IMG/VR virus record: IMGVR_UViG_3300043425_001539
Location: 1-64,000 of that record
DNA: 64,000 bases
Reading direction: 5' to 3' (one strand)
Shown here: piece by piece, positions 7,037-61,267 of the stretch
Numbering within the stretch: position 1 is the stretch's first letter
Layout: each line of letters starts with the position of its first letter
Notes under the pieces: generated by a model
Database searches by the model: none
What the model was told of the DNA's origin: nothing
The model's input: only the letters and a program-made list of their open reading frames with translations
Program-made: the position numbers and the translations under genes

Positions 7037-7064
7037 TTATATTACAAAATGATGAATAGTTCTT
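7037..7064 (-). promoter_or_regulatory. Middle-type (ECF-like) promoter GAACT-N14-AATATAA
   Basis: Motif recurs upstream of replication and nucleotide genes. Confidence 0.65.
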
Positions 7065-7071
7065 GAAATTA

Positions 7072-7266
7072 TCAGTCTTCTAAATCCTTGTTTGTACTAC
7101 GAATAAACGGTGTAAAAAATACTTTTTGATCCTGAAATGCTTTATGAAACATTTCAAAACCTTTATCACCTTCAGCAGGCTGTGCCACATATTTAGGCGG
7201 TTCGTAGTTGCTGGTTAACCCTTCTTCAAAGTCAACAAATTTTTGTGTTTTTTTATTCTTGGTCAT
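7072..7266 (-). CDS. Hypothetical protein
   Basis: 64-aa ORF overlapping the end of the upstream gene. Confidence 0.5.
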   Translation of the reverse strand: MTKNKKTQKFVDFEEGLTSNYEPPKYVAQPAEGDKGFEMFHKAFQDQKVFFTPFIRSTNKDLED

Positions 7267-7573
7267 GGCTTATTCCTTCTATATTTTTCTTTTTGGCAAT
7301 ATCTTTAGCTTCTGATAAATCTTGTTTCTTTTTAACAAGTTCAGCTTTTTCAATATCTAATTTTTTTAGTTTAATATCTAATTCCAAAATTTGAGCATCA
7401 TAAGATTTTTTTTCTCTAACCGCCTTTTTTCTTAATTCTATTAAATCTTCAAGCTCAGCAATTAATTGCGCCGTCGACGGTTCTTTTTCTAATTTTGTTT
7501 CCGCCTTTTCTTTATTTTCAGTAATTTCATATTTGGTTTTTTCCCAATCGGTGAATTTAACAAAATTGCTCAT
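7253..7573 (-). CDS. Hypothetical coiled-coil protein
   Basis: K/E-rich; late-type motif at 7591-7603. Confidence 0.6.
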   Translation of the reverse strand: MSNFVKFTDWEKTKYEITENKEKAETKLEKEPSTAQLIAELEDLIELRKKAVREKKSYDAQILELDIKLKKLDIEKAELVKKKQDLSEAKDIAKKKNIEGISHDQE

Positions 7574-7607
7574 TGCAAATATTTTTTTTATAGTTTATAT
7601 ATTATAA

Positions 7608-11018: not shown

Positions 11019-11033
11019 TTCACAAGTTTATTT

Positions 11034-12399: not shown

Positions 12400-12437
12400 C
12401 TATTAAAAATACAATTTGTTTTATACAATTTGTTTTA

Positions 12438-21829: not shown

Positions 21830-21859
21830 GTATATTATATTCTTTTGATTAAAAAGGTT

Positions 21860-22966
21860 TTAAAAATTGAATTGGGAAAAGATATCTGCCTCAATAGGTT
21901 TGCCGTTACTAACAAAACGTGTTCCTTCTAGCAAAGAGTTCATATCATAGGAGCGTGAACCCAAATCTTTATATTCTTGATTTATCGAAATTTTAAATTT
22001 TTCTTGAATATCTGAAGGGATTATACGTTCATCAAGAAATACCAATTGTAAATTTCTTACTAATCTTGATTTAATAACTTCAGAAGGAGCTGAATGTTTA
22101 CAAGTAGTTTCAATTGCCTTTGCAACTTCAGTTGCACGATTAGGTAAATCAAATACGTCATCAACATTTTTTGACATATTTAAAATATCATACATTCTTT
22201 TTGCTTTTGATGCAGTCACTCGATAAGTTTTGTTATCTTTAGTCCAAGACCAAATAGGAGGAACTGCATCACCAGCATCTCCTGTAATAACCTTTTCAAA
22301 TATAATGTATTTGTGATCAATTTCTTCAAGTGGCATTGAACCAAGCGCATCTGAAATGATATCTTTGGAGCGATTCATATATGTGTTTGCATCAAAAAGA
22401 TTATATTCTTCGGATTGCAGCCAGGATTGAAAACCCAATGATGAAGTTATTTTGCGACTTTTGGAATTTGGGTTATACACAACCACAAAATTTTTGTCAT
22501 TATGTTTAACACATTGTGTTAAATCCCGATCGCCAGTAATAATTACTGCGTCTGATCCTTCGTTAAAAAAATGATTAGCCCACAAAAACATTAAATCATC
22601 GCCTTCAGCGCGTTCTTCTCGGGAAATAATAATATTTTTAGATTTTAGAATTTCTGCAAATTCATTCATGCAGCCATAAAAAGCATCCCAATCTATAGAT
22701 GAAGATTTTTCTTCTCGATGTCCTTTATATGCGCCATCTTCAATTTCAATATCCTTACGCCAAGATTTTGAATCAATTGTAAAAACTATTTTATTTGGAT
22801 TACCAAAAACACGAACAGCGTGTGAAAAATCAGTTGCAACTTTTCGAACAAACATTTCTTGCTCTTTCTTGCTTTCCAAAACCTTTCCTTTTGAAGCGTA
22901 CCCACCAAATATGAATAGCGTTTTATAAAAGAGGTAATTTCCGTCTATAATTAAATTTAATGCCAT
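21860..22966 (-). CDS. RNase H / 5'-3' flap exonuclease (T4 rnh-like)
   Basis: LIIDGN, YKGHR, AEGDD, TGDRDL.Q, GDAGDAVP motifs. Confidence 0.88.
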   Translation of the reverse strand: MALNLIIDGNYLFYKTLFIFGGYASKGKVLESKKEQEMFVRKVATDFSHAVRVFGNPNKIVFTIDSKSWRKDIEIEDGAYKGHREEKSSSIDWDAFYGCMNEFAEILKSKNIIISREERAEGDDLMFLWANHFFNEGSDAVIITGDRDLTQCVKHNDKNFVVVYNPNSKSRKITSSLGFQSWLQSEEYNLFDANTYMNRSKDIISDALGSMPLEEIDHKYIIFEKVITGDAGDAVPPIWSWTKDNKTYRVTASKAKRMYDILNMSKNVDDVFDLPNRATEVAKAIETTCKHSAPSEVIKSRLVRNLQLVFLDERIIPSDIQEKFKISINQEYKDLGSRSYDMNSLLEGTRFVSNGKPIEADIFSQFNF

Positions 22967-22987
22967 TATTTATATTTTTTTTATTAT

Positions 22988-23047
22988 TACAAATATACAA
23001 ACTTTAATTGAAATAAAAAAATTTTTTCAAAAAAAGTTATTAACAAT
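22988..23047 (-). promoter_or_regulatory. Early (host-sigma) promoter block, TAnnTTTG type
   Basis: TATATTTG at 22990-22997; repeat of 6278-6337. Confidence 0.75.
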
Positions 23048-24519: not shown

Positions 24520-24540
24520 TTTTTTATTTATTTTTGATAA

Positions 24541-24568
24541 TTATATTCTAAATAGTATACTTAGTTCT
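24541..24568 (-). promoter_or_regulatory. Middle-type promoter GAACT-N15-AATATAA
   Basis: Shared motif, upstream of the clamp loader. Confidence 0.65.
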
Positions 24569-24573
24569 TATTG

Positions 24574-27823: not shown

Positions 27824-28423
27824 TTAGTTTATTGAACCGCTTGCTAATGTTTCGGATTCAGAGTCTATTGATGATAAAAATGATTTAAAATCTGATATTG
27901 ATTTATCAATAAAATCATGTGAAATATCAGAGTTATCTTTAATAAATGTTTTTAATTCTTCCAATGAAAAAAGAACTTCTCCAGCTTTGTCTCCGACAGC
28001 AGCAAGTAATGCGCCTGATTTATCAGGTTTATTTTCTGAAGTTTTTGGATTGGATTTAACATCCGTTTCAGAATTATATACTCCAGTTTCATAAAGGTTC
28101 TTTTTCTCTAATATATTAATTGGTTGTAAAAAGCTCTTTTTAATTAACTTTTTTTTTCCTGCACCATAAACTATTTCCACATCGTCATTATCTCCACGGC
28201 TAGTAAAATCAAGAGCTTTCATTTTTACTTCTTCCCCATACCCGGGAATTAATATTTTAGCTCTTACATAATCATCAGCCTCCCTAATCCCAACTGAGGC
28301 GCCGTCAACTTGAGTGGTTATTTCAAGATCGTTTCCTGGTTGGGATTGGGAGGCTGGTTTATGATTTTTTAAATCAGCAGGTTTAACATCATACGTTCTG
28401 CCAGACTCGTCTTCAACTGTCAC
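27824..28423 (-). CDS. Hypothetical protein; probably the -1 frameshift extension of 28456-30018
   Basis: Only a GTG start; the frame is open back to the A9 slippery run at 28460-28468. Confidence 0.6.
   Translation of the reverse strand: MTVEDESGRTYDVKPADLKNHKPASQSQPGNDLEITTQVDGASVGIREADDYVRAKILIPGYGEEVKMKALDFTSRGDNDDVEIVYGAGKKKLIKKSFLQPINILEKKNLYETGVYNSETDVKSNPKTSENKPDKSGALLAAVGDKAGEVLFSLEELKTFIKDNSDISHDFIDKSISDFKSFLSSIDSESETLASGSIN
27827..27852 (-). promoter_or_regulatory. Middle-type promoter variant AAACA-N14-AATAAAC just upstream of the gp55-like gene
   Basis: Same spacing as the other copies but a weaker match. Confidence 0.4.
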
Positions 28424-37044: not shown

Positions 37045-37077
37045 ATTAATTTATATACATTGAATAACTAATTGTTT

Positions 37078-37407
37078 TTAGGACCAAGGATTATTAATAA
37101 CTTGATATTGCATTTCAGGTTTTTTACCTGACGTCAAACCTATTCTTTGTAAAAAAGCGCCTGGGCAATCTTCCGGATCAGCTGCATAATCCAAAAATCC
37201 TGAAAGCTCACTAATAGTGCCTACACCGTCTTTCATGTAAGGCCACACTTGAGACGGTGTAAAAGGACTATTTAGTTCTTCTTTGTCTGATAAGTTACTA
37301 AGAAGCATATATGTTAAATCAGTGTGTGATGGAAAGCTTTCCATCTCTTTATACACATTTAACAAATATTTAATAGGTAATTTGTTTTGATTAATCTTCA
37401 TTTTCAT
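37078..37407 (-). CDS. Hypothetical protein (likely start 37407 or 37401)
   Basis: ORF coupled to the end of UvsX part 3. Confidence 0.55.
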   Translation of the reverse strand: MKMKINQNKLPIKYLLNVYKEMESFPSHTDLTYMLLSNLSDKEELNSPFTPSQVWPYMKDGVGTISELSGFLDYAADPEDCPGAFLQRIGLTSGKKPEMQYQVINNPWS

Positions 37408-40419: not shown

Positions 40420-41562
40420 TTATTTTAAATTTATATTCAATAAGTTTTTGATAGTTTCTTGATTATTTCTTTGATAATCCCAAACTACAAAATATAAAAA
40501 TCCAGCTTCTTCTGCAATACGTTTTTTTTCTTTATCTTTTTGCAATGATTCTTCATAAGTATAAATAGGATTTTTCCAATTTTCTTTTGACTTGTTAGAA
40601 TCAGCGTGCCAAAAACTTCCGTGATATTCAATAATTATCTTTTTTTCAGGAATGACAAAGTCATAAAAATAAATCTTTTTATTTACGTTATCATATAAAA
40701 AATATTCATTTTTTCCGTATAAACAATTAAGATTTATAAAGTAATTTTTTTCTATTTCTTTAAAGAAAATATATGATTCAGTTGAAAAAAATTTGTTTCT
40801 TTTTATTCTTTTACAAATTATTTCTAATTTTTCATCATCTGGTTTATTTGCCCAATTCTTTTTAAATAAGTCTATTCTTTTTTCATATCTTTTTATACCT
40901 TCGTCATAACCGTATTTTTTTACATATGCTTGAAGAGATGTTGTAGTTTGTCTTTCTTTTAATGCATTTTTTGCATCTTCAAGTGTTAAACCGCGTTCCA
41001 AATAAAAACTTAACTGTCTATCAGAAACAGCTTTCCCAAGTTTTTTATACAAAGTATTTTTTATTTTACCTGCGCGTGAACATCTATTAAAAATTTTTTG
41101 TTTAGCCTCTTCTTGCGTTAGACCCTGATTTTTTACAAGCCAATCTGCATTTAAACCATTACCTTTTCTTTTGTTTATTTCTGCTTTTTCTTCTTTTGTT
41201 TTTTTGGAAAGCGTTGCTTGTATTTTTGCAGCAATCTCAGGCGTACAGGTTGATTGTCTTTTCTTAATTTTTTCAATTGCTTGAGCTTTACTCCATCCTC
41301 TGTCTATCCAATAATTAATATTTAATTGGGTTGCAGAAAAAAAACCAATCATTGATAAACAAATTCTGCTTGCCTGTTTTTTTTCGATCTGAACATAATT
41401 ATCAAGATAACGTTGATACATTTTCTCAAATTCGTTTGTGTCTGCATCATAATTAAAATTTGAAACAAGCTGTCTTACATACTTGATATAATCATCGTAA
41501 GACAGCTTGTTTTTAAAAATGCTCAACGGATTTTTACTCTTCGATTGTGTACCTTTCATCAA
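40420..41562 (-). mobile_element. Free-standing Vsr/DUF559-like homing endonuclease between UvsX parts 1 and 2
   Basis: Helical repeats (YW..RG.S..EA), then FYDF..IIIEYHGSFWHA..KD..K..IA...GF....VWD. Confidence 0.8.
40431..40457 (-). promoter_or_regulatory. Middle-type promoter AAACT-N15-AATATAA inside the last HEG codons, upstream of UvsX part 2
   Basis: Minus strand reads AAGAAACTATCAAAAACTTATTGAATATAA. Confidence 0.6.
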
Positions 41563-43262: not shown

Positions 43263-43278
43263 TAAAAATTGTTTAAAT

Positions 43279-43305
43279 TTATATTCATTATTTATTAAAT
43301 AGTTT
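43279..43305 (-). promoter_or_regulatory. Middle-type promoter AAACT-N15-AATATAA for the PolB C-subunit
   Basis: Shared motif. Confidence 0.55.
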
Positions 43306-43389
43306 TTTTTAAAAATATCACCAAATTAATGTTTTTTTCATTTGTGTGTTTTATGTTTTTTATATATAAACAAAAATAATATCATAGAA

Positions 43390-45351: not shown

Positions 45352-45395
45352 TGCGTATAATTTTAATTATTTTATTCATATTTAAACATATAGTT

Positions 45396-46013
45396 TTAAA
45401 TTATCTGATCTATTAATCCGTATTTTAAACATTGTTTAGAGTTCCACCAAATATCATGTGAAAGTATTTTATCTAAATCTTTAGCAGGAATTTTTGTTTT
45501 TGCTGTATACCATTCCTTTATGGTTTTCATAATGTTATCATTGCTTGTCATCTGATCTTTAAGTCTACTATATTTTCCCCAATGTACATCACTTAATTCA
45601 TGAATTAACATATATGAATTTTTTCTCATTAATCTTTTTGCTCCTGCTGTTGATATAATAGTTGCACCAGATGCTGCAGCTCCTTCAATTACTGTTATAA
45701 CTGGCGTTAATGAAGAAATGCGTTCAATCGTATCCGCAATTGCAAATGATGAAAAAACTTCGCCACCCATAGAATTTATATGTAAAAATATAGGCGCGGG
45801 TGATCCTACTTCTTGCATTGATGAAAATGCGGTGGGCGCTAATCTCATTGATAGTTCATGCAAGGCGCGATTAAGAGCCATTGCTGATGATTCATCCACT
45901 CCGCCATAAAACCAAACGTGGTCACCTATAACCGAAACTGCTTGATGCGTAGATAAGTCTGAATCATAATCATTCTTTTTTAAATTTAATAAATTTGTGT
46001 TTTGTGTAATCAT
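45396..46013 (-). CDS. ClpP-family serine protease
   Basis: IFLHINSMGG, AASGAT, MLIHE, CLKYGLIDQII. Confidence 0.85.
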   Translation of the reverse strand: MITQNTNLLNLKKNDYDSDLSTHQAVSVIGDHVWFYGGVDESSAMALNRALHELSMRLAPTAFSSMQEVGSPAPIFLHINSMGGEVFSSFAIADTIERISSLTPVITVIEGAAASGATIISTAGAKRLMRKNSYMLIHELSDVHWGKYSRLKDQMTSNDNIMKTIKEWYTAKTKIPAKDLDKILSHDIWWNSKQCLKYGLIDQII

Positions 46014-47404: not shown

Positions 47405-47462
47405 AATATTGATAAGTTTAATATTGTTAAATTTATATTCAATAATTTTTTAAAGTTCTTAC

Positions 47463-47495
47463 AAAAAAACAGAGGAATTTAAAATTCCTCTGTTT
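47463..47495 (-). terminator. Intrinsic terminator
   Basis: AAACAGAGGAATTT/AAATTCCTCTGTTT with a U tract. Confidence 0.8.
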
Positions 47496-47866: not shown

Positions 47867-48226
47867 TTATTTTAAAGACAGTAAGTACTTTAGTTTTTGA
47901 ATATCCGCAATAACTTCATCTTTAATATTTGCTAATTCTGAATCTTGTTGCGCCATAAAAGTATTATTCATAAAATCTTCAAACGATTCAATAAATGCAT
48001 CAATTTTAAGATTATCATAATCTGCAAGGGTTATTTGCCTAACTCCATCAAACTTAGGTCTCTTATACTTTCCGCTATAAACTTCAACTATTCTGTCAAA
48101 TTTATCGCTTAAGCTTTCATAGGTTTCACCAAATGCTTTATGTTCTGCATACGAAGTAGTTTGCCAATGTAAAATTTTAAGCTGTCCTTGAATTTGGACA
48201 ATATTTGCAAGTAAGTCCTTTTCCAT
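47867..48226 (-). CDS. Ferritin/Dps-like four-helix protein (DUF5856-like)
   Basis: LHWQT.SYAEHKAF...Y......D..VE..G..KLKYLL; late motif at 48241-48254. Confidence 0.7.
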   Translation of the reverse strand: MEKDLLANIVQIQGQLKILHWQTTSYAEHKAFGETYESLSDKFDRIVEVYSGKYKRPKFDGVRQITLADYDNLKIDAFIESFEDFMNNTFMAQQDSELANIKDEVIADIQKLKYLLSLK

Positions 48227-48283: not shown

Positions 48284-50125
48284 TTAAATTCTTCCTTCAA
48301 GCCACTTTTTTCTTTTGTCTGATGATACACCAAATGCAATGTCAATAAATTTTCCAGCTGACCTATCTTGTCTTACTTTGAACATTTTTCTTTCAGCCAT
48401 AATTACTTGCCAATCTTCAATGCTTAAAGATCCTAAACCTTTTAAATATCGAACTCCTTTATAAGCTTGTCCGCTTTTTTCAAATTCACCCCATTCTTGC
48501 AATGAATAAAAATATTTGCGTTTATTATTTACTTCGGCTGAAACAAGAGGAGTTATTAAAATATTTAATTTGCCTTGCTCAATTACTTGAGGAAACCATT
48601 TATAAAAAAGATTAATTACCAAAGATGCAATATGTCCAATTCCATCAGGATCCCAATCAGTTGCAATTGCAATGTTGGCAAAAGAACATTTACTTCCGTC
48701 TTTAGGTTCAAGATTTAAGATATTCATTAAATCAATAATTTCATTGTTTGTACTTAAATCTGATAGACTCCTTGCATTTTTAATTTTTCCTTTTAATGAA
48801 TAAACAGCATCAACTCGCGGATCTCTTTTTTGTAAAATTGAACCCATAGCCGAAGACCCTTCTACAATAAATAAAGTTCCTTTACTTCCTGACGGCGGAA
48901 AATACTTGTCGCTGATTTTCTTTGCTGCTGCTCTCTTTTTACTTTTGATTGCATTTAAATCTTGTTTAAGATTACGCTCGTCAATTTTCTTCTTTACATT
49001 TTCATAAAATTCTGATCTTAATACTCCATTTTTTAGTTTTTTATAAAATTCTTTTTCAAGTAAAGGTTGAATTTCCCACCGGCCTGCAGCATATTTAGTT
49101 TTATTTTGATCCGCAAATCTAACCAATTTAGGAGGTACATTTAAAACTAAAAATGTATCATAAAAGTGATGGCCTAATTGATAGTCAAGCATTTCGTTGA
49201 TCCAATCAATAAATATTTTTTGATGAATGCCTGTGCAGATAGCGCCATTCACAAAAGATGCGCTTGCGCCGTTTTCATATTTTTCCCAAGCAAAAAATAT
49301 TCCCAATTTGGTTTTAAACATAAGTGCATTATCAGGCAAAAAAGGCAAATTAAGATCAAGCTTCTCGCCATCAAACACAAATTCAATTTCCAAATTGGAA
49401 ATTACCGGGTCTTCCTTTTTAAGGAATTGCCGAAAAATAAACATTGTATGCAAATACTCTTTATCCCATGTGCAATTTTTAAAAACATCTTTTCTTGGAA
49501 TATAAGTTACTGTTGTTCCTGTAACAGCATTCTTTTTCTTTTCGGTTTTCTCTTCTTTGTCTTTGACAAATTTTGTCCAATGAACTTCAAAATGAACCTC
49601 ATTATTTGTGGTTGATACACTAAATTCATCAGACAACATATTAACCAATGCAGCGCCTACGCCGTTTGTTCCGATAAGAGAGTCTGATGAATTTTCGTTA
49701 TAAAAATTTGAACCTGCTCGCAACATTGACATTGCTGTCTCAACATTTGATTGTCCTGTTTTAGGATTAGGCTTTTCTGCATTTATAAATCCGCTTCCAG
49801 TATCTGTTACGGTTACCTGATTTGTTTTGGAATTTATTTCTACCGTAATCTTCGGCATTGTGCCTTTCATTCTTTTTGCTTCGTCAAAAGCATTGTCTAC
49901 AATCTCATTGAGCATTTTGTAGAATCCAACTGAAACAATTTTATTTTTTTCTACAAGTTTGCCATTTTCCACAATTTGAACTTTTTCTTCTGTCTTTTCT
50001 ACACTTCCTATATACATAGTTGGTCTAGCAAGACAGTGTTCAAAATCGCTTAATGCAACTATGGTTTTATTGTCATATTTTGACCTTTTTTCTTTTTCTA
50101 AATCCTTCGGATCTTTATTTGCCAT
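48284..50125 (-). CDS. Type II topoisomerase, ATPase/TOPRIM subunit (gp39+60/GyrB-like)
   Basis: RPTMYIGS, EIVDNAFDE, DTGSG, GTNGVG, EGSSA, LKGK, TDWDPDG, YLKGLGS. Confidence 0.93.
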   Translation of the reverse strand: MANKDPKDLEKEKRSKYDNKTIVALSDFEHCLARPTMYIGSVEKTEEKVQIVENGKLVEKNKIVSVGFYKMLNEIVDNAFDEAKRMKGTMPKITVEINSKTNQVTVTDTGSGFINAEKPNPKTGQSNVETAMSMLRAGSNFYNENSSDSLIGTNGVGAALVNMLSDEFSVSTTNNEVHFEVHWTKFVKDKEEKTEKKKNAVTGTTVTYIPRKDVFKNCTWDKEYLHTMFIFRQFLKKEDPVISNLEIEFVFDGEKLDLNLPFLPDNALMFKTKLGIFFAWEKYENGASASFVNGAICTGIHQKIFIDWINEMLDYQLGHHFYDTFLVLNVPPKLVRFADQNKTKYAAGRWEIQPLLEKEFYKKLKNGVLRSEFYENVKKKIDERNLKQDLNAIKSKKRAAAKKISDKYFPPSGSKGTLFIVEGSSAMGSILQKRDPRVDAVYSLKGKIKNARSLSDLSTNNEIIDLMNILNLEPKDGSKCSFANIAIATDWDPDGIGHIASLVINLFYKWFPQVIEQGKLNILITPLVSAEVNNKRKYFYSLQEWGEFEKSGQAYKGVRYLKGLGSLSIEDWQVIMAERKMFKVRQDRSAGKFIDIAFGVSSDKRKKWLEGRI

Positions 50126-50173
50126 AATTTATTTTTTTGTTATTTTTAAGATGCTATTTTCTTGTTGTTATAA

Positions 50174-50223
50174 TTATATCACACAAAAGAAAAAAGTTCT
50201 GTAGAAGTCATCTACAGAACTTT
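50174..50223 (-). terminator. Terminator hairpin overlapping the middle-type promoter GAACT-N14-GATATAA
   Basis: AAAGTTCTGTAGA/TCTACAGAACTTT inverted repeat. Confidence 0.7.
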
Positions 50224-51939: not shown

Positions 51940-53766
51940 TCATTTTATTTCTGAATATAACATAATTTTCATACCTTTTTTGTTTGCCGTTGACATTTTT
52001 GAGCTTGAGGATGCCAAATCATCGGTAAACAAAACTTTTGCATCTTTTATACCTGCGTGGTAATAACCTTTTGATTTTGCAAATTCTAAAAATTCTTCTT
52101 TTGTTTTAAATCCAGCTGATTTAGGAGAACCTGTAAATTCACAAGGAATCATATCATCTGCAATTTTTTCAGGCATAACTATTTCCAAAAACTTTGAAAG
52201 ATTTTGAACTGCACTTTCATATTTCTCTCTCTTTTTTTCACCTTGGCCAAATCCTGATATTACTGTTTTTTCCAAACCTGCAAAATTATATTTTACACCT
52301 GAGAGCATATTTCCAATTTGCTTTGCTGATGAATATCCCATTCCAGGAAATCCTAACATTAATACAACATCAGCAGGTTTAAGTGTTTTGATTTTGGCAA
52401 TTTCGTTAAACATATTATCAACAGTTTTACCAGGCTTGAGATCACTGTTTGCATATAAATGTTGTTTGGTAAATTTAGTAGGATCAAGTATTTCAACAGC
52501 TGATCTATATCCTGCTTTCCAAAGTTGTTTAATCATTGCTCCACCGACGCCATCAATTCCTAATTGTTGAACTCCTTGAGCAAACATATTATAAGCAATG
52601 TTTTCACAAGTAGGATTAACACACATTAAGTGAATTCCTTGTGTGTGTAATTCTGAGCCACATTTGCAAGTTTTAGGAACAATTAGATTATTGCGAGATC
52701 CTTGAACAACAACCCGAGTAATTTGAGGAATAATGTCTCCGGATTTTGCGATCGCAACAGTTGCACCCGGAAAAGCTCCTTTAGATAATAAATATCCGTA
52801 ATTAAATAAAGCGGCGCGGGAAACGGTTGTTCCGTCAAGTTCAACAGGTTCCATTACAGCAACCGGTGTTACTTCACCTGTTTTGCCGTATTGCCAAGAT
52901 ATTCCAGTTATTTTGGTTATTGCTTCTTTAGGTGGGAATTTAATTGCAACCGCCCAATTTGGATCATGTGAATTTTCTCCCCACACAGGACGAATTTCTT
53001 CGGGCGCCTTAATTACAAATCCGTCTAATTGATATTCACAAGTATTACGGTATTTTAACATTTTTTCATACACATCAGCAAAGTTTGTTGCCTGATTTTT
53101 AAATGTGTATGGTTGATATTTAAAATTCAAAGAAGATGTATCAGTATAAATAACATTCTCGTTTTCGTGGATTTTAACCTCGACAGGAATAAAATCCAAA
53201 TCAGCAATAACACTTGTAGGATTTTCGTCGCGGTTTAAAACACCAGCAACATAATTTCTTGGATTTTTAAAATCGGAATATTTTTGATTAAATGTAGCAA
53301 TTTTAATTACAACCTCACCGCGTACCTCCACAATACCTTTTACATCGATGCTGTCTGGAACATTGTGCTTTACCTTTTCTGTAATATCTCTGCCTTTATT
53401 GCCATTTCCTCGTGACAATATTTGTATCAACTTACCATCTTGATATATGACGTTTGCGGCGTTGCCGTCATATTTTGGAGAAAACTCAAATTCAACTTTA
53501 CCAAATTGTTTCATCCAATTGGACGCTGATTCAATTGGCGGTTTTCCCGACAAAGATGCTTGATATTTTGATAATGAAAGCATCGGAGATGGGTGGGAAT
53601 ATTTTGCCTTACGATCTGATGCTCCTACTTTATGTGGAGCATCAGATCCAAGTAATAGCAATTGTTTTTCTATGTGGTCAAATTCATCGTCAGAAACAAT
53701 AGGCGTCCCAGCATAATAGGCATCTTTTGCTTCAAAGTAAAGTTGTTCTAATTGAAACCTTTCCAT
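51940..53766 (-). CDS. ligA: NAD-dependent DNA ligase (ATG at 53766)
   Basis: YYAG.P..SDDEFD, PMLSL, KYDG, RGNG..G.DIT, EVRGE, NPRN, AIKF, GDIIP, zinc finger, BRCT-like end. Confidence 0.93.
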   Translation of the reverse strand: MERFQLEQLYFEAKDAYYAGTPIVSDDEFDHIEKQLLLLGSDAPHKVGASDRKAKYSHPSPMLSLSKYQASLSGKPPIESASNWMKQFGKVEFEFSPKYDGNAANVIYQDGKLIQILSRGNGNKGRDITEKVKHNVPDSIDVKGIVEVRGEVVIKIATFNQKYSDFKNPRNYVAGVLNRDENPTSVIADLDFIPVEVKIHENENVIYTDTSSLNFKYQPYTFKNQATNFADVYEKMLKYRNTCEYQLDGFVIKAPEEIRPVWGENSHDPNWAVAIKFPPKEAITKITGISWQYGKTGEVTPVAVMEPVELDGTTVSRAALFNYGYLLSKGAFPGATVAIAKSGDIIPQITRVVVQGSRNNLIVPKTCKCGSELHTQGIHLMCVNPTCENIAYNMFAQGVQQLGIDGVGGAMIKQLWKAGYRSAVEILDPTKFTKQHLYANSDLKPGKTVDNMFNEIAKIKTLKPADVVLMLGFPGMGYSSAKQIGNMLSGVKYNFAGLEKTVISGFGQGEKKREKYESAVQNLSKFLEIVMPEKIADDMIPCEFTGSPKSAGFKTKEEFLEFAKSKGYYHAGIKDAKVLFTDDLASSSSKMSTANKKGMKIMLYSEIK

Positions 53767-53786
53767 ATTTGTTTGAATAATTATAT

Positions 53787-53820
53787 TACAAATATACAAC
53801 TATTTGTTGAATAAAAAAAA
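53787..53820 (-). promoter_or_regulatory. Early (host-sigma) promoter, TAnnTTTG type
   Basis: TATATTTG at 53789-53796 in the same context as the other two copies. Confidence 0.7.
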
Positions 53821-53869
53821 TTTTTAGGTAACTTTTTTTCTTAAAAAGTGTTAAAATTTTCTATAAGAT

Positions 53870-54566: not shown

Positions 54567-55646
54567 TCATCCTTCACAACTTACGCAATCTGGGTCAGTT
54601 GCTCTTGCTGCTATATCACCTCGTAATACACTTTCTGTCCTTGTATAATATAAAGTTTTAATACCTTGTCGCCAAGCTTCCATATGTACTTGGTTAATCC
54701 ATTTAGGTTCAGCGCTTGAAGGGAAGGCAAGATTTAAAGAGACAGATTGATCTATGTATTGTTGTCGTATCCCAGCTTGCTTGACTAAATCCAATTGATT
54801 AATTTCTTTAAATGTCTTAAATACATCTTTAACCATATTGCATCTGTTTTGCTCATCTTGAGTTAATTCGTTAAAATTACACACCTTTCCGTCAAGAAAA
54901 CACCAGGAATCCAAAAAGTCCAGTCCTTGAATAGAACCGCCGTCCACAAAAATTTGATCCCAAACTTCTTTGGTATTTTTACCAATTCCTTCAAGTACTT
55001 TTTCAAGTTCGTGGTTTTTTCTAATAAAAGTTCCTTTTGCAGTTTGCTCAGTAAAAACATTGGCAGCCCAAGGCTCAATACCTGAAGATACGTTTCCACT
55101 TAATTTGGAATTTGACACAGTTGGAGCAACAGCACGTAAATGTGTATTTCTAAATCCTGTGTCTTTGCACCATAAAGGTTCACCGTATTCGTTTGCCAAA
55201 TCTCTACTTGCTCTTTCGCTTTCAATTTTTAATTGTGAAAAAATTCTGCGAGTTTCAAACTGAGCCTGTAGGCCTTCAAAAGGAATTCCGTTTTGTTGCA
55301 AATATGTATGCCATCCAAGTACGCCTAATCCTAATGCTCTTCCTTTTTCAGCTGATCTTACAGCATTTTCAAAGCCTTTCATATTTTTGGCTTTTTGTAT
55401 AAATTCCTCTAAAACTCCATCCAAAAACCAAGTAGCTGTATACATCAAATCCGTATCTTTCCACTCGTTGTATTTAGCAAGATTGAGAGAACTTAAACAA
55501 CAAACAAAAGAGTGCGATTCATCAGTGAAAAGCACAATTTCACTACAATTATGGACTAATATATCATTAGCATAAAAGTTTTTATTTTCAGCAACTGTTA
55601 TATCATAAACCGGTTCACGTTTTGTTGTTTTTTTAATTTTTAACAT
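54567..55646 (-). CDS. nrdA: Ribonucleotide reductase alpha C-part preceded by a 33-aa split-intein C-fragment
   Basis: VYDITV..NFYANDILVHN|CSEI..CCLSSLNL, APT, DQSVS.NL, KTLYY, CVSCEG. Confidence 0.93.
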   Translation of the reverse strand: MLKIKKTTKREPVYDITVAENKNFYANDILVHNCSEIVLFTDESHSFVCCLSSLNLAKYNEWKDTDLMYTATWFLDGVLEEFIQKAKNMKGFENAVRSAEKGRALGLGVLGWHTYLQQNGIPFEGLQAQFETRRIFSQLKIESERASRDLANEYGEPLWCKDTGFRNTHLRAVAPTVSNSKLSGNVSSGIEPWAANVFTEQTAKGTFIRKNHELEKVLEGIGKNTKEVWDQIFVDGGSIQGLDFLDSWCFLDGKVCNFNELTQDEQNRCNMVKDVFKTFKEINQLDLVKQAGIRQQYIDQSVSLNLAFPSSAEPKWINQVHMEAWRQGIKTLYYTRTESVLRGDIAARATDPDCVSCEG

Positions 55647-57055
55647 GTTTCAACTTTATTTTTTATTTTTATAAATTCAAATTGATCTAAATGAGTTTCT
55701 AAATTTTCTTTTAATTTTTGTGAAAATCTAGAAGAATTTGAATTTTCTTCAATTATCCTAGATTCATTTATATTATACTTTATCTCTGCAATACATTTAT
55801 CGTTTATTATTAAATAAAACATTACTTCACCCCAGTCTGGTTCAACTGTATAAAAGAACAAACCGTTACTAATAAAATAGCTTTTGGTTGGCAAATTCTT
55901 TATTATTTCATTTCTAGTAAGTCCTATAGAAATTCCCTTATTAGGTTCTATATTTTCCATTTCATGTGTTTTTTGATATATTTCCATTTCTTTCATTTTT
56001 TTAAAGTCTTTTATTGATAAGCCTTCTATGTTTGTTAGAAAAATATAATTATGATACTTTGCAGAAAACATAACACAATCTTGTATTTTTTCAAAATTTG
56101 ATTCATCTCTAATATATCCTTTTAATTCTATTAAATATTCTTCGTTATCAATATTAATAATAAAATCTGGCGTATATAATTTAGAGCCAATGCAAATAGT
56201 TACATTTTCATAAGACCAACTTTCTAATATATTTTCATTTGGTTTAATTATTTTTTCTATAAACTCAGATTCTAAAGAAGATCTAGTAATAAAAGGTTCT
56301 GTATTAAGGCATTTTTTAAAATCTGCGTTGTTAAATTCTGTTCTTTTAAATATTGGATTACCCATTGAATTTGAACCCATTATTGAATGATATGTCCCTA
56401 TTATAGAATTTATAATTTTATATGCCTCATCTAAATTACTGTCGGTTAAGTTTTTTAAGATATCTTTATCATAATATTTTTTATAAGCTTCTTTATTCCA
56501 AAAGTTTTGTATTTTAGATAATTTATATTCATCGCTATTAACTATCTTTCGTCGAAACTGCGAATAAATTTTATCTACATTTTCATTGGAGACGCCATCC
56601 AAGAAATATCCTTTATTTGATAAAACCAATCTTTTCCAATCTGTAGTATTAAATTCTTTATCGTAAGATTTTCGTTTATCTGTCCAATTATCCTTCTTAT
56701 TTTTTAAATTAGGTCTACCTTTAAGTTTTTTAGAGTGATCTGGTCTTCTTTTACCTCTAAATGAATGTCCCCTATTATAATTAGCATCTTTTACATCATG
56801 TCTAAATGTTATATTATCAAAAATTTTGTATTTGTTATCATCAACTTCAGATTTACAAACTTTTAAGAAATCATCTAATGTTAAGATTTTATTTTTTATA
56901 ATATACTTTAGTACATAAAAATATTTATCTTTATAGACTTTCTTACAAATATGTATAATACTTGAATCTATTAAATCTTCAATTTTTTCAATATTTTTTT
57001 TGATAGTTAATACAGATAGTTTTTTATACCCTTGTAATACTTCTAAAGTGTTCAT
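55640..57055 (-). mobile_element. Free-standing PD-(D/E)xK homing endonuclease between the nrdA halves (likely ATG at 57055)
   Basis: GKRRPDHSKKLKG (NUMOD-like); RSSLE..WSYE..YTPDF..LIELKG. Confidence 0.75.
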
Positions 57056-57104
57056 GACCAATATAAATTTTATTTATGTTATATATTCAAGTCATGAACA
57101 CTTT
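57045..57104 (-). promoter_or_regulatory. 14-bp hairpin sequestering the HEG AUG, with a late-like promoter in the loop
   Basis: AAAGTGTTCATGAC..GAATATATAAC..GTCATGAACACTTT. Confidence 0.8.
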
Positions 57105-57109
57105 TTTAC

Positions 57110-58240
57110 TTAATTTGTAATTAAAATGTCATCTTCCAATAAATCTTTTGCCTCTACCCAACCTCTTTGTGTAAATAATTTATGATTAGCTGTGCATTTT
57201 ATTGTTTTATTATTATCTAAATCTTCAATTTCATATACTTCAGCTGAATCATCAGTCATACCAAAATCGGTTATTAATTTCCATTCATTTATGTTAGTAT
57301 CAATATTACGTGATAGCGTATAAATTTGATCTTCTAATTTAAGTATTTCACCAATTTCATCTATTCTTACTTTATGAATTTCATCACTTATTTTAATATC
57401 AATTATCGTATCACCTGTCACACAAATATTAGTCATAAATACTTTTAGACCGTTTTTCTTATATGATTCGGGGTTTTGTTTATTGACATTGCCTTTAAAC
57501 ATAATATAAGGTTCACCGGTCGCTTTTCTTTTTTGCAAAAGTTTGCCCCATTTACGGCGTGCTTCGGTATCACCATCTAATAATTTGCGCATAAATTTAT
57601 CACCAACAACTGCGCATTGATGCATATTTAATGATTGGCGATTAACATCACCTTTAGGTTCTCGTGTTTCCAACCAATCTTCAAAATCTTTATGCTCAAT
57701 ATTAATATTTGTACTTGCTGCGCCTCTTCTTACAGCACCTTGATTGGTTGCAAGAATTGTTGAATCATAAATTTTGCAAAAAGGAACCACTCCATCTGAT
57801 GTTCCATTACCCGTTATTTTTGATCCAGCAGGTCTGATTTGATTAATACCAATACCTACTCCACCTCCATGTTTTGCAAGCAACATTAGTTCCAAATTTT
57901 TAGAACCTATTTCATAAATACTATCGCCAACATCAATCCCAAAACAACTAATAGGTAATCCTCTATCTGTTCCCATATTTGACAAAACTGGTGATGCCAA
58001 GCCTAGCCAGCCTTTCCAAATATAATCAAAAAATTTAGTAGCAAGGTGTGGCTTTCCTAATCTTTTAGCAACAGTGGTAGAAACCCGCCAATAAGCATCT
58101 TTAGGTTTTTCTCCCGCTAAAAGATATCCTTTGGATATTGTGTTAACATAAATTTCTGTTGCGCCCCAATCAGGAATATCAACTCCAAGTTCCCAGCCCA
58201 ACATATCTAATAATTCTTGTACTTTTTCGTTATTCATCAT
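57110..58240 (-). CDS. nrdA: Ribonucleotide reductase alpha N-part (272 aa) plus a 104-aa split-intein N-fragment
   Basis: ASPVLSN, LPISCF, GGGVG, RRGA, TGEPY, MTNI|CVTGDT..CTANH..WVEAKDL...D. Confidence 0.93.
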   Translation of the reverse strand: MMNNEKVQELLDMLGWELGVDIPDWGATEIYVNTISKGYLLAGEKPKDAYWRVSTTVAKRLGKPHLATKFFDYIWKGWLGLASPVLSNMGTDRGLPISCFGIDVGDSIYEIGSKNLELMLLAKHGGGVGIGINQIRPAGSKITGNGTSDGVVPFCKIYDSTILATNQGAVRRGAASTNINIEHKDFEDWLETREPKGDVNRQSLNMHQCAVVGDKFMRKLLDGDTEARRKWGKLLQKRKATGEPYIMFKGNVNKQNPESYKKNGLKVFMTNICVTGDTIIDIKISDEIHKVRIDEIGEILKLEDQIYTLSRNIDTNINEWKLITDFGMTDDSAEVYEIEDLDNNKTIKCTANHKLFTQRGWVEAKDLLEDDILITN

Positions 58241-58256
58241 ATTTTATTTTTTCTTT

Positions 58257-59279: not shown

Positions 59280-59280
59280 A

Positions 59281-60657
59281 TTATTTTATATATTTTTTAA
59301 GTTGTTCAATTTCATCTTCAATATCCATATATTCTTTTTTTGCCTTTTTTCTTTTACCGTAGTAATTTGCAAGAATCGTTCTAAACACCGAGTCCTCTTC
59401 CTTTTTAAACAAAGCTCCTGACGACGTTTTAATATATTTATCTACGTCAACTTCTTCATTTTTATCGACGTTGTATAGATATGATTCCGGAGATATATTC
59501 CATTGCCTCATTATTGAAGGATAAAGAGACGCAAAGTCAAACGATGCAACCCATTCATATATTCCTGTTTTGGGATCAACGACAAAAGCTCCTTCATAGT
59601 GTTCCTTCTTTTTAGTTATTTTATCCGTTTTAGGAAAAACCTTACCTCTTGACCAATTTTCGCGTGCCATTGCAGCTTCAGCCATCCAAATTGGGGAAAA
59701 TGCCCGATTTGCTTCAACTTGGGTAATATTTCCAAGCAGCAAAAAAGTTTGCATTGTGTTAATTTTTTCATCGATCATTTCAACCAATTTGGTATCAACC
59801 GCATTATAGAAAATATATGTTTCAAAATCATTTTCATACATATCTTGCAAAGTGCCTGGATATTTAATTTTATTTATTCCCAGCGCTGCTTTTGCTACAT
59901 AGTCCAATGTGTTATTTTCTTTGATATCAATAACCCGATCCCATTTTTTATATACATCAAGATAGTCAACAACAAGTCGGTGAACAGGAAACTGTAAATC
60001 ACCTGCTAATTTGTATGTTGGTGAACATGCTGAGATGTCAATGTTTAATCTTTTGCATCGAGTAATTAAATATGTCCAGTCAAAACCAATAAAATTCCAT
60101 CCAGTCAAAAGTGGCATTTTTGGAACTGCTTTCAAGAAAAAAGAAGAAAGCATATCATATTCGGTTTTAAAATATAGATAATTAAAATCTACTTTTTGAT
60201 TGATATGTTCCTCAATTTTTTTCTTGATGTTAAATATTTGTTCAGCAGTTAATTGCTTTGTTCCCATCGAGATTACTTTTTCTTTATGACAAAAGGTAAT
60301 TGCAGTGACAGGAGTTTTTGCCAATTCTGGTTTAGGCCATTCATCGCCTACAAAGACCTCAATATCAATAAAGAATTTTTTGGGAACATTATTTGAATAA
60401 ATGTTTTTGGTGCGTTCTTCAGGTAATGAAAGTAAAAATTCTTCAATTCTCCATTTACTTAAGAATTTAGTTTTTTTCTTCTTTACAGGTTTGCCGTCCC
60501 AGGACATAACTCCTGGGAACGGTTTATCATTTCCTGTGCAATATTCCCATTCAAACATTTCTTCCATTGGAACAGATATCCTATCAAGAGCAACATCACC
60601 ATTTTCATTAAAATAAGAAATTGTAAGTGTTGAATCTTTTTGTTCAATATCAATCAT
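59281..60657 (-). CDS. polB: Family B DNA polymerase, N-terminal subunit (exonuclease plus motif A; gp43A-like)
   Basis: DIE, GWN..GFD, YN..D, YEGAFV, DFASLYPSI...NISPE; ends in the fingers helix. Confidence 0.92.
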   Translation of the reverse strand: MIDIEQKDSTLTISYFNENGDVALDRISVPMEEMFEWEYCTGNDKPFPGVMSWDGKPVKKKKTKFLSKWRIEEFLLSLPEERTKNIYSNNVPKKFFIDIEVFVGDEWPKPELAKTPVTAITFCHKEKVISMGTKQLTAEQIFNIKKKIEEHINQKVDFNYLYFKTEYDMLSSFFLKAVPKMPLLTGWNFIGFDWTYLITRCKRLNIDISACSPTYKLAGDLQFPVHRLVVDYLDVYKKWDRVIDIKENNTLDYVAKAALGINKIKYPGTLQDMYENDFETYIFYNAVDTKLVEMIDEKINTMQTFLLLGNITQVEANRAFSPIWMAEAAMARENWSRGKVFPKTDKITKKKEHYEGAFVVDPKTGIYEWVASFDFASLYPSIMRQWNISPESYLYNVDKNEEVDVDKYIKTSSGALFKKEEDSVFRTILANYYGKRKKAKKEYMDIEDEIEQLKKYIK

Positions 60658-60688
60658 GGTTTATATTTTTAGATGTTAAAATGAAAAA

Positions 60689-61171
60689 TTAGTATCCGTT
60701 TTTTTGCCTTTCGCGATTATGCTCATTTTTGGACATATACATATTATACATTTCCTGCGAAGTCATTCCGATAGAAGCGGCATAATTCATAAAGAAATGC
60801 AACATATCCACAATCTCAAATTTGCATTCCAGTTGGTCATCAATAGACAAATCAGAAAATTTTAAATTGGCATATTTATTGTAATCTTTTTTCCAACGTT
60901 TCCAAACAGCTGACCCACCTGAAGAAACACCGCCCAAAGAATCTGTTGCTTCATGAATTTCATCGATCATTGCGTGATTATTCATGTGCCAAAAATTCAT
61001 TATATCCCTAAGAGACATATTTTCAAAGTCATAACCATAAACATTTTTTTGAGTTTCAGCTTGAAGATTTAAAATATCGCCCAAAGTATCTGTAAATTCG
61101 TTTGATTCAATTGCTTTGGACCAAAGGTCATCAATTTTTAAATGCGAACAAGTATTATCTGTATTTGCCAT
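60689..61171 (-). CDS. Dimeric dUTPase/dCTP pyrophosphatase (T4 gp56/MazG-like fold)
   Basis: EIHE, WKRWK, EIVDMLHFF, Y..KN..N..RQ..GY; middle motif at 61191-61217. Confidence 0.8.
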   Translation of the reverse strand: MANTDNTCSHLKIDDLWSKAIESNEFTDTLGDILNLQAETQKNVYGYDFENMSLRDIMNFWHMNNHAMIDEIHEATDSLGGVSSGGSAVWKRWKKDYNKYANLKFSDLSIDDQLECKFEIVDMLHFFMNYAASIGMTSQEMYNMYMSKNEHNRERQKNGY

Positions 61172-61241
61172 ATTATTATAGTGTTTGTTTTTATATTCAA
61201 TTATTATACTTAGTTCTTTTTTAAGAATAATGTTGGTTTGA

Positions 61242-61267
61242 AAACTTTTTTTTAAATGCGTATATAA
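61242..61267 (+). promoter_or_regulatory. Middle-type promoter AAACT-N14-TATATAA, divergent
   Basis: Same motif on the plus strand, facing a non-coding repeat region. Confidence 0.5.

What the first reader, a model, noticed from the sequence alone, without database searches (positions are those of the whole stretch)
7037..61267. Middle promoter motif (G/A)AAC(T/C/A)-N14/15-(A/G/T)ATA(T/A)AA, about 12 copies
Seen on the minus strand at about 7037, 21835, 24541, 27827, 37051, 40431, 43279, 45370, 47433, 50174 and 61191, and on the plus strand at 61242. The genes behind them are the dCMP deaminase operon, both clamp loader subunits, gp55, helicase, UvsX part 2, polB-C, clamp, both topoisomerase subunits and the dUTPase-polB-nrd operon. 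The tight spacing and functional coherence argue against chance.
Basis: seen in the sequence. Interest (0 to 1): 0.6.

Follow-up and report, generated by a model that had tools for sequence, protein, structure and literature searches.

The report
Phage ECF-sigma middle promoter class
A two-box promoter motif (AACT, 16-17 bases, TATAA) really does sit in front of the DNA-replication genes of this large T4-like phage and its relatives. It is most likely read by an ECF-type sigma factor that the phage itself encodes, which is a different solution from T4's MotA/AsiA switch.

Summary
The motif is real. The site at 27827 does not fit.

- **Independent genomes.** A matrix trained here finds 46 coding-strand and 2 other-strand sites in six related phage genomes; shuffles give 0-0.2 per genome. 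T4 lacks the motif.
- **Genes served.** These include clamp loader, clamp, helicase, primase, split polB, both topoisomerase subunits, nrd and thymidylate genes, tRNA clusters, and gp55 through a conserved internal site at 28071-28104.
- **Distinct class.** It differs from an early class (Bacteroidota TAnnTTTG type) and a late class (GATATATA(A/G)A, no -35 box).

No MotA or AsiA was found. The phage does encode an ECF-type sigma factor (5640-6251) directly behind an early-type element. The -35 box is the ECF hallmark (compare GGAACTT of E. coli sigmaE), with matching geometry and recognition-helix residues.

My best reading is a cascade: host sigmaA, then the phage ECF sigma (this motif), then gp55. 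There are no expression data, so timing and the sigma-promoter link are inferred.

The parts
7034..7066 (-). M-class promoter before an 85-aa ORF and dCMP deaminase. It lies about 0.8 kb upstream of the sigma gene, which is next in line on the same strand.
   Evidence: Matrix score 21.5. dCMP_cyt_deam_1 E 2e-13. A matching site lies 0.8-2.7 kb upstream of the sigma gene in 18 of 22 related loci.
21832..21864 (-). M-class promoter before the gp62-like small clamp-loader subunit (21413-21829).
   Evidence: Score 22.5. Atlas look-alike Phage_clamp_A 0.93, 223 shared features.
24538..24571 (-). M-class promoter before the gp44 large clamp-loader subunit (23569-24519).
   Evidence: Score 21.3. phrog_168 E 2e-64. 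The motif is present before 26 of 29 distinct orthologue upstream regions: 24 score >=13 and two more are recognisable by eye. Among the 21 scoring >=15 the boxes carry 2.0 bits per column and the flanks 0.1-0.5.
28071..28104 (-). Weaker M-class promoter inside the upstream ORF, about 280 nt before gp55.
   Evidence: Score 13.7 here. A site scoring 13-21 lies at -275 to -301 from gp55 in 24 of 29 close relatives.
37048..37081 (-). M-class promoter before the DnaB/gp41-like helicase (35743-37044).
   Evidence: Score 19.5. DnaB_C E 3e-19, phrog_19 E 6e-53.
40428..40461 (-). M-class promoter in the 3' end of the upstream ORF, before the UvsX/RecA piece with intein fragments (39204-40409).
   Evidence: Score 19.7. 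phrog_97 UvsX-like E 7e-25, Intein_splicing E 1e-12.
43276..43309 (-). M-class promoter before the DNA polymerase B C-terminal part (42084-43262).
   Evidence: Score 24.0. DNA_pol_B E 2e-14, phrog_262 residues 498-839.
45367..45400 (-). M-class promoter before the sliding clamp (44608-45351).
   Evidence: Score 23.7. Atlas structure matches gp45 and PCNA clusters at TM 0.77-0.79. No sequence-family hit.
47430..47462 (-). M-class promoter before the topoisomerase II A-type subunit (46010-47404). A terminator hairpin at 47467-47495 abuts it.
   Evidence: Score 22.7. DNA_topoisoIV E 6e-37. Terminator.
50171..50203 (-). M-class promoter before the topoisomerase II large (GyrB-type) subunit (48284-50125). 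The 3' arm and T-run of the terminator at 50193-50223 form its -35 box.
   Evidence: Score 18.3. HATPase_c plus Toprim. Terminator.
61188..61220 (-). M-class promoter before the MazG/dUTPase-like gene, polB N part, nrdB and split nrdA.
   Evidence: Score 20.8. phrog_173, phrog_2062, phrog_86, phrog_84.
61238..61270 (+). Divergent M-class promoter on the plus strand, 170-210 nt before an Hsp20-like gene (61440-61838).
   Evidence: Score 19.1. phrog_432 Hsp20 E 6e-8. A second divergent pair exists at genome 109561-109622.
5640..6251 (-). Phage-encoded ECF-type (group IV) sigma factor, 203 aa. It is the proposed reader of the M-class promoters.
   Evidence: Sigma70_r2 E 6e-13, Sigma70_r4_2 E 7e-15. 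TIGR02937 sigma70-ECF 68.2 bits against a cut-off of 42.9; nearest subfamilies Sig70_bacteroi1 and GFO_1088/PG0214. Nearest solved structures SigE, E. coli sigmaE and SigW.
6252..6337 (-). Early-type promoter element with the Bacteroidota sigmaA -7 box (TATATTTG), directly before the sigma gene.
   Evidence: Sequence. A TAnnTTTG-type box with an upstream GTTAATAACTT block also precedes the sigma gene in most of the closer relatives. Consensus TTTG/TANNTTTG as given in PMC6847099.
27473..27817 (-). gp55-like late sigma factor, the downstream step of the proposed cascade.
   Evidence: phrog_234 late sigma transcription factor E 2e-13. Weak Sigma70_r2 hit and no region 4.

Best explanation
The motif is the promoter class of the replication and nucleotide-metabolism ('middle') genes of a T4-like jumbo phage that probably infects a freshwater Bacteroidota host. 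It has a -35 box, A(A/g)AACT(A/T)TT, and a -10 box, tG(A/T)ATATAA, with AACT-N16/17-TATAA spacing.

It is most likely read by host core RNA polymerase carrying the phage's own ECF-type sigma factor (window 5640-6251).

Proposed cascade:
1. Host sigmaA reads the early elements (TAnnTTTG type), one of which sits directly before the sigma gene.
2. The phage ECF sigma then turns on about 33 M-class promoters. These serve clamp loader, clamp, helicase, primase, polymerase parts, topoisomerase, nrd and thymidylate genes, tRNA clusters, probably its own operon, and gp55.
3. gp55 reads the late promoters, GATATATA(A/G)A, before the structural genes.

Shown here: the motif, its enrichment, its conservation, the three classes, and the presence and type of the sigma factor.

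Inferred: that this sigma reads this motif, and the timing.
For: **The motif is real and conserved.**
- The matrix at >=17 bits gives 31 minus and 2 plus sites in this genome. Both plus-strand sites lie before plus-strand genes.
- In six related genomes the counts are 9:0, 6:0, 0:6, 1:6, 1:17 and 7:0, against 0-0.2 in shuffles.
- Loci around the sigma gene give 21:0 and loci around gp55 give 19:0.
- The motif is present before 26 of 29 distinct gp44 orthologue upstream regions, with divergent flanks.

**It is not a translation signal.** Two sites precede tRNA genes.

**It is a separate class.**
- Early elements carry TATATTTG (20:1 by strand). Late sites, GATATATA(A/G)A, are 34:4 by strand, show no upstream conservation, and precede tail sheath and neck genes.
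- The sigma-70 consensus is not enriched: 87 against 98 +/- 9.

**Link to the sigma factor.**
- This is the only protein in the genome with a sigma region 4, and it is ECF-type.
- It sits behind an early-type element here and in the closer relatives.
- The -35 core AAC followed by T-rich sequence is the ECF hallmark. E. coli sigmaE binds GGAACTT (PMC1540707).
- The recognition helix TVRTRIRKARE aligns with TVRSRIFRARE of sigmaE.
- Lane and Darst report that T instead of S at position 172 goes with A instead of G at -34. Here that residue is T and -34 is A in 23 of 31 sites. R176, which reads the G at -35, is K here, and -35 is A in 27 of 31 sites.
- An ECF-type sigma is present in 16 of 18 related records, including distant clades. 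One distant genome (G008) was read in full and keeps a GAAACTTTT box.
- An M site before gp55 shows that the class cannot itself depend on gp55.
- No MotA or AsiA was found. T4 lacks the motif.
Against: - There are no transcript data. No RNA run holds this phage, so start sites, timing and sigma dependence are all untested.
- The -10 box (TATAA) is not the GTC/CGT type usual for ECF sigma factors. It resembles this phage's late box, so another factor could read it.
- F175 of sigmaE is R here, unlike most ECF sigmas.
- Within the close clade the recognition helix does not vary, so no covariation test was possible.
- In the distant genome G008 (sigma 33% identical) the motif is weak and sparse.
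- The MotA search had no positive control.
- The record is 84% complete, so a missing activator gene cannot be excluded.
Confidence: 0.65

Rival explanations
1. Sigma appropriation of the T4 kind. An unrecognised phage activator binds the AACT box and works with host sigmaA, possibly remodelled by an AsiA analogue, which reads the TATAA box. The ECF sigma would then serve another purpose.
For: T4-like phages are the classic case of this mode. Most early ORFs here have no known function. The record is 84% complete. The -10 box is not typical of ECF promoters.
Against: - No MotA_activ or AsiA match was found.
- The box sits at the -35 position with 16-17 nt spacing, not at -30 with 11-13 nt.
- Bacteroidota sigmaA needs TAnnTTTG (PMC6847099), which the M box lacks.
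- A dedicated sigma with a matching -35 preference is present and conserved.
Confidence: 0.12
2. A host alternative (ECF) sigma factor reads the motif, and the phage merely exploits a host stress regulon.
For: The -35 box is generic for ECF sigma factors, and Bacteroidota carry many of them. The phage sigma is closest to Bacteroidota ECF families, so a host paralogue with the same specificity may exist.
Against: Host ECF sigmas are normally held inactive by anti-sigma factors. The phage and 16 of 18 related records carry their own copy, placed behind an early-type element. That would be pointless if the host factor were enough.
Confidence: 0.08
3. The sites are late-type gp55 promoters with an added upstream enhancer box.
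For: The M -10 box, G(A/T)ATATAA, resembles the late box GATATATAA.
Against: - gp55 lacks region 4, and late sites show no upstream conservation.
- M sites serve replication genes, whereas late sites serve tail sheath and neck genes.
- A conserved M site drives gp55 itself, which gp55 could not start.
Confidence: 0.05
4. The matches arise by chance from AT-rich intergenic composition.
For: The genome is 32% G+C, and no single 4-mer dyad passes Bonferroni.
Against: Dinucleotide shuffles of the same intergenic DNA give 1.4 hits against 14 observed. Strand bias is 31:2 here and 46:2 in six independent genomes, with shuffles at 0-0.2. Positions are conserved before orthologous genes.
Confidence: 0.01

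Closest known systems
T4 middle promoters (MotA box plus sigma70 -10, with MotA and AsiA)
   Same: A second promoter class in a T4-like phage, placed before replication and nucleotide-metabolism genes and tRNA genes. It depends on an early phage product and lies between host-type early promoters and gp55-type late promoters.
   Different: - The box is AACT at the -35 position, 16-17 nt from the -10 box, not TGCTT at -30 with 11-13 nt.
- No MotA or AsiA was found.
- T4 has none of these sites.
- The proposed reader is a complete alternative sigma factor, not an activator plus a remodelled host sigma.
ECF (group IV) sigma promoters, for example E. coli sigmaE: GGAACTT at -35 and GTC at -10
   Same: - Invariant AAC followed by T-rich sequence at -35.
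- By my recollection of the sigmaE consensus, the same distance from AAC to the -10 box.
- The cognate sigma has only domains 2 and 4.
- The recognition helix is nearly identical.
- The residue-172 and -34 rule of Lane and Darst holds.
- A promoter of the class lies upstream of the sigma's own operon.
   Different: - The -10 box is TATAA with a conserved G three bases before it, not GTC/CGT.
- The -35 and -34 bases are A/A rather than G/G, and K replaces R176.
- No anti-sigma partner was identified.
- It is used as a developmental switch of a virus, not as an envelope-stress response.
Phage-encoded sigma cascades (Bacillus phage SPO1 gp28 then gp33/34; phiEco32 gp36)
   Same: Host sigmaA reads the early genes, one of which is a phage sigma factor that redirects host core polymerase to middle genes.
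   Different: These are different phage lineages, sigma families and promoter sequences. Here the ECF-type sigma is combined with the T4-type gp55 late system in one genome.
Sigma factors noted in T4-like 'group 2' jumbo phages (Iyer et al. 2021, PMC7824862)
   Same: That survey notes that group 2 jumbo phages encode minimal (gp55-like) and more complete sigma factors, and lack their own polymerase.
   Different: The passages on sigma factors that I read give no ECF assignment, no cognate promoter and no temporal role. I did not read the whole paper.

Membership tests
T4-type MotA/AsiA middle promoter | MotA box (a/t)(a/t)(a/t)TGCTT(t/c)A centred at -30, 11-13 bp upstream of a sigma70 -10 box. 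| tested here: not met
   The upstream box is A(A/g)AACT(A/T)TT, and AACT lies 16-17 nt before TATAA. The T4 genome has 1 match against 3 and 1 for the control pattern.
T4-type MotA/AsiA middle promoter | motA and asiA genes present in the phage. | tested here: inconclusive
   No MotA_activ (PF09114) or AsiA (PF09010) match in the 238-kb record. The MotA control rang nowhere, the AsiA control only below the cut-off, and the record is 84% complete.
ECF (group IV) sigma-dependent promoter | -35 element with an invariant AAC core and T-rich 3' side. | tested here: met
   AAC in 31 of 31 sites, T next in 28 of 31, then (A/T)TTT. The hallmark is described in PMC1540707.
ECF (group IV) sigma-dependent promoter | Tight spacer of about 16-17 nt between the -35 and -10 boxes. 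| tested here: met
   Only two spacings occur among 31 sites (16 and 14 sites, plus one outlier). The AACT-Nx-TATAA profile peaks at 16/17.
ECF (group IV) sigma-dependent promoter | -10 element of the GTC / CGT(C) type. | tested here: not met
   The -10 box is G(A/T)ATATAA. Only the G is shared with the GTC of sigmaE (PMC6648896).
ECF (group IV) sigma-dependent promoter | A cognate ECF sigma factor (domains sigma2 and sigma4 only) available in the same system. | tested here: met
   Window 5640-6251: TIGR02937 68.2 bits against a cut-off of 42.9. r2 and r4_2 domains. Present in 16 of 18 related records.
ECF (group IV) sigma-dependent promoter | This sigma initiates transcription at these sites. 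| not testable with these tools
   No RNA run holds the phage. This needs in vitro transcription or a reporter assay.
Bacteroidota sigmaA promoter (-33 TTTG / -7 TAnnTTTG) | -7 box TAnnTTTG. | tested here: not met
   After ATATAA the M sites continue with A or T. G occurs at most 3 times in 31 in any following column, so no TTTG box forms. The separate early class does carry TATATTTG.
T4-type late promoter (gp55, single -10-like box) | No -35 element; a single A/T-rich box close to the start. | tested here: not met
   M sites have an invariant -35 box. The separate late class, GATATATA(A/G)A, shows no upstream conservation.

The most novel reading that the evidence does not exclude
A large, uncultured lineage of freshwater T4-like jumbo phages of Bacteroidota has no MotA/AsiA switch. 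It runs its middle genes through its own ECF-type sigma factor, giving a three-sigma cascade in one virus: host sigmaA, then the phage ECF sigma, then gp55. Its promoter code, AACT-N16/17-TATAA, is readable from sequence alone.
Probability: 0.6. Interest if true: 0.68.

Novelty: new variant of a known kind. Interest (0 to 1): 0.6.

Why it matters
How T4-like phages without MotA/AsiA time their replication genes is poorly understood. Nothing on promoter classes of Bacteroidota-infecting T4-like phages turned up in my literature searches.

- **A testable answer.** A clean three-class promoter code and a candidate sigma factor offer an answer for a whole uncultured lineage.
- **Annotation.** The code lets early, middle and late genes of these metagenomic genomes be annotated from sequence.
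- **A new use of ECF sigmas.** ECF sigma factors are known as bacterial stress switches; here one would act as a viral developmental timer.
- **A possible tool.** The sigma-promoter pair is compact, apparently orthogonal to the Bacteroidota sigmaA code, and could be tried as an expression tool.

Tried and rejected
- **Close cultured relatives.** A near-identity DNA search of 20 kb against GenBank phages found nothing. The topoisomerase is only about 30% identical to that of cultured T4-like phages. The sigma's best phage hits are crAss-like, Lak and huge phages at 23-32% identity.
- **Expression evidence.** The look-up of sequencing runs returned only DNA metagenome contigs, mostly freshwater, and no RNA run. 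I did not use read laying, because contigs cannot show transcript starts.
- **Covariation between sigma residue 172 and the -34 base.** All close-clade sigmas carry the same helix, so no test was possible.
- **A different motif in distant clades.** Genome G008 (sigma 33% identical) shows only about ten weak GAAACTTTT-N13/14-TA(T/G)AA candidates. This is suggestive but not significant on its own.
- **Unbiased dyad search.** After masking, M dyads rank top, but no single dyad passes Bonferroni.
Rejected at 0.9 bits.
- **Classical sigma-70 promoters.** Not enriched.
- **Sequence-family and PDB sequence searches for the clamp.** Empty. A fold-level match settled it.
- **Literature.** Searches found no description of ECF-sigma middle promoters in T4-like phages. 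The library does not hold most subscription journals.
Full report
**Setting.** The window is the first 64 kb of a 238,475-bp IMG/VR virus record. The record is 84% complete and 32% G+C, and about 95% of its ORFs lie on the minus strand. It is a very distant T4-like phage. Its topoisomerase II large subunit is about 30% identical to those of cultured T4-like phages, and no close DNA relative exists in GenBank phages. Near-identical DNA occurs mostly in freshwater metagenomes.

**Observation.** I read all twelve places.
- Eleven share a two-block pattern on the coding strand. The 31 best sites in the genome give A(27/31) A/G(23/8) A A C(31/31) T(28/31) A/T T T T, a short variable spacer, then G(27/31) A/T A T A T A A A/T.
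- Only two spacings occur, which equals AACT-N16/17-TATAA.
Twenty-six of the 36 lie in the roughly 8% of the genome that is non-coding.
- Against dinucleotide shuffles of the intergenic DNA, the window has 10 hits where 0.66 are expected.
- A gapped-dyad search with no prior pattern ranks AACT-N13..18-(GAAT/TATA/ATAT) first once the repeated early elements are masked. Single dyads do not pass Bonferroni.

**Independent genomes.**
- A weight matrix trained on this genome finds, at 17 bits or more, 31 minus and 2 plus sites here. Both plus-strand sites are in divergent intergenic regions before plus-strand genes.
- In six related phage records that took no part in training, the counts are 9:0, 6:0, 0:6, 1:6, 1:17 and 7:0. 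That is 46 on the coding strand and 2 on the other, with 0-0.2 expected from shuffles.
- The simple pattern AACT-N15/16-ATATAA gives 18:0, 15:1, 8:0, 10:0 and 4:0 in five records, and 1:0 in T4, where the control pattern gives 3 and 1.
- Before the gp44 orthologues of 29 distinct relatives (73-100% protein identity), 24 have a site scoring 13 bits or more and two more are recognisable by eye. Among the 21 scoring 15 or more, the boxes carry 2.0 bits per column and the flanks 0.1-0.5.
- In 18 of 22 loci around the sigma gene, a site lies 0.8-2.7 kb upstream of it. The total is 21 sense and 0 antisense hits in 373 kb.

**What lies behind the sites.**
- In the window: dCMP deaminase, gp44, DnaB/gp41-type helicase, a UvsX piece with intein fragments, the polB C part and both topoisomerase II subunits; a clamp with gp45/PCNA fold; a gp62-like small clamp-loader subunit; and an operon of MazG/dUTPase, polB N part, nrdB and split nrdA.
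- Outside the window, the same class precedes primase, a separate 3'-5' exonuclease, thymidylate kinase with thymidylate synthase, a DNA-binding protein with a helicase, a glycosyltransferase, and others.
- Two sites precede tRNA genes (one single gene and one cluster of six), so the motif is not a translation signal.

**gp55.** In 24 of 29 close relatives, a site scoring 13-21 bits lies 275-301 nt before the gp55 start, inside the preceding ORF. In this window it is at 28071-28104 and scores 13.7.

**Three promoter classes.** Listing all intergenic regions shows two further classes.
- *Early class.* About 20 copies of a conserved element of roughly 80 nt end in GTTGTATATTTGTATATAA. The core occurs 20 times on the minus strand and once on the plus strand.
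  - The copies are concentrated at 208-237 kb among small ORFs. In the window they lie at 6252-6337, 22967-23039 and 53767-53869.
  - They carry TATATTTG, the -7 box TAnnTTTG of the Bacteroidota primary sigma factor (PMC6847099).
  - This suggests a Bacteroidota host and a host-read early class.
- *Late class.* GATATATA(A/G)A occurs 34 times on the minus strand and 4 on the plus strand, 27 of the 34 in non-coding DNA. It shows no conservation further upstream and lies before tail sheath and neck genes. This is the gp55 type.
- The classical TTGACA/TATAAT consensus is not enriched: 87 against 98 +/- 9.

**Who reads the motif.** There is no MotA or AsiA match. The MotA control did not ring, so that negative is weak.

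The genome does encode one protein with sigma regions 2 and 4, at window 5640-6251, 203 aa.
- It is ECF-type. TIGR02937 scores 68.2 bits against a cut-off of 42.9. The nearest subfamilies are Bacteroidota ones, Sig70_bacteroi1 and GFO_1088/PG0214.
- The nearest solved structures are SigE, E. coli sigmaE and SigW.
- It sits directly behind the early-type element at 6252-6337. In the closer relatives the sigma gene is likewise preceded by a TAnnTTTG-type box.
- ECF sigma factors are defined by a -35 element with an AAC core and a T-rich 3' side; E. coli sigmaE binds GGAACTT (PMC1540707). The M box is that element with A/A in place of G/G.
- The recognition helix of the phage sigma, TVRTRIRKARE, aligns with TVRSRIFRARE of sigmaE.
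  - R171, which reads the C:G pair of AAC, is kept.
  - Position 172 is T. Lane and Darst found that T instead of S goes with A instead of G at -34, and here -34 is A in 23 of 31 sites.
  - R176, which reads the G at -35, is K, and -35 is A in 27 of 31 sites.
- By my recollection of the sigmaE consensus (16-nt spacer before TCAAA), the distance from AACT to the -10 box is the same. That is not a tool result.

An ECF-type sigma of 205-238 aa is present in 16 of 18 related records, including clades whose gp55 is only 51-61% identical. In one such genome (G008), upstream boxes of the form GAAACTTTT persist with a looser -10 box.

The class precedes gp55 itself, so it cannot depend on gp55.

**Mechanism proposed.**
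1. Host sigmaA reads the early elements, including the one before the sigma gene.
2. The phage ECF sigma then redirects host core polymerase to about 33 M promoters. These serve replication, nucleotide metabolism, tRNAs and gp55. They probably also serve the sigma gene itself, by read-through from the conserved site at 7034-7066, as in the positive autoregulation usual for ECF sigmas.
3. gp55 reads the late boxes.

The parts list and their conservation are shown. The pairing of sigma and motif and the timing are inferred.

**Weak points.**
- The -10 box is TATAA-like rather than GTC/CGT, and it resembles the late box.
- F175 of sigmaE is R here.
- The close clade offers no covariation.
- No transcript data exist.

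**Comparison and novelty.** Functionally this is the counterpart of T4 middle promoters, but it fails their defining features: box sequence, box position, MotA/AsiA and presence in T4. It works like an ECF-sigma promoter and like the sigma cascades of SPO1 or phiEco32, combined with the T4-type gp55 late system.
- A survey of jumbo phages notes that T4-like 'group 2' phages encode sigma factors of two sizes. The passages on sigma factors that I read give no ECF assignment or promoter (PMC7824862).
- My literature searches found no description of this arrangement.
- I rate it a new variant of a known kind, of moderate to good interest.

**Compliance with the operators' notes.** No alternative genetic code was used.

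Noticed in passing
window 6252-6337, 22967-23039, 53767-53869; genome 193574-193670 and about 16 copies at 208-237 kb: A conserved element of roughly 80 nt ends in GTTGTATATTTGTATATAA. It carries the Bacteroidota sigmaA -7 box (TAnnTTTG), and some copies have TTTG 19 nt upstream. It is probably the early promoter class and a clue to a Bacteroidota host. In the window it precedes the sigma gene, an exonuclease (21860-22966) and an NAD-dependent DNA ligase (51940-53799).
   Followed up: partly
window 1915, 3358, 5213, 7594, 16865, 21386, 30044, 39159, 48245 (9-nt sites, minus strand) and about 20 more in the genome: Late-type box GATATATA(A/G)A, 34:4 by strand, with no -35 conservation. It lies before tail sheath and neck genes, often only 2-25 nt from the ATG.
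   Followed up: partly
window 50193-50223 and 47467-47495 (minus strand); also genome about 145215-145245, 138020-138055 and 187275-187300: Terminator hairpins sit directly upstream of M promoters. In some cases the 3' arm and T-run of the hairpin form the GAACTTTTT -35 box, making compact terminator-promoter modules.
   Followed up: partly
window 24545-24560, and the same place before gp44 in about 20 relatives (L040-L074): The spacer of the gp44 promoter carries a conserved (A)GTATAC(T) palindrome that the other M promoters lack. The promoter at 61188 has the similar AAGTATAA. It may be an extra regulatory site.
   Followed up: no
window 61188-61270; genome 109561-109622: Two back-to-back divergent pairs of M promoters. 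In the pair at 109561-109622 the two -35 ends overlap by a few bases; in the window pair they lie about 17 nt apart.
   Followed up: no
genome 171264-171485 and 173142-174295 (L034 7264-7336 and 9142-10010): M-type promoters, each followed by a shared leader of about 60 nt, precede one tRNA gene and a cluster of six. They lie next to a 541-aa RNA-binding protein (phrog_850).
   Followed up: partly
window 39204-40409, 42084-43262, 59281-60657, 54567-58240; genome 108866-109549: Several replication genes are in pieces.
- UvsX carries Hint/intein fragments and is followed by a homing-endonuclease-like ORF (38112-39149).
- polB is split into N and C parts 16 kb apart, with a separate 3'-5' exonuclease gene.
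- nrdA is split in two around a 473-aa ORF of unknown function.
   Followed up: partly
window 21832-21864, 37048-37081; genome 83449-83482, 160346-160378: At several M sites the TATAA box ends only 3-8 nt before the annotated ATG. The mRNAs would then be leaderless, or the true start codon lies further downstream.
   Followed up: no
related record G006, 27090-27233 and 192212-192370: One related 202-kb phage record carries two ECF-type sigma genes.
   Followed up: no
window 47867-48226: A 119-aa ORF matching 'starvation-inducible transcriptional regulator' (phrog_858) sits behind a late-type box, between the two topoisomerase genes.
   Followed up: no
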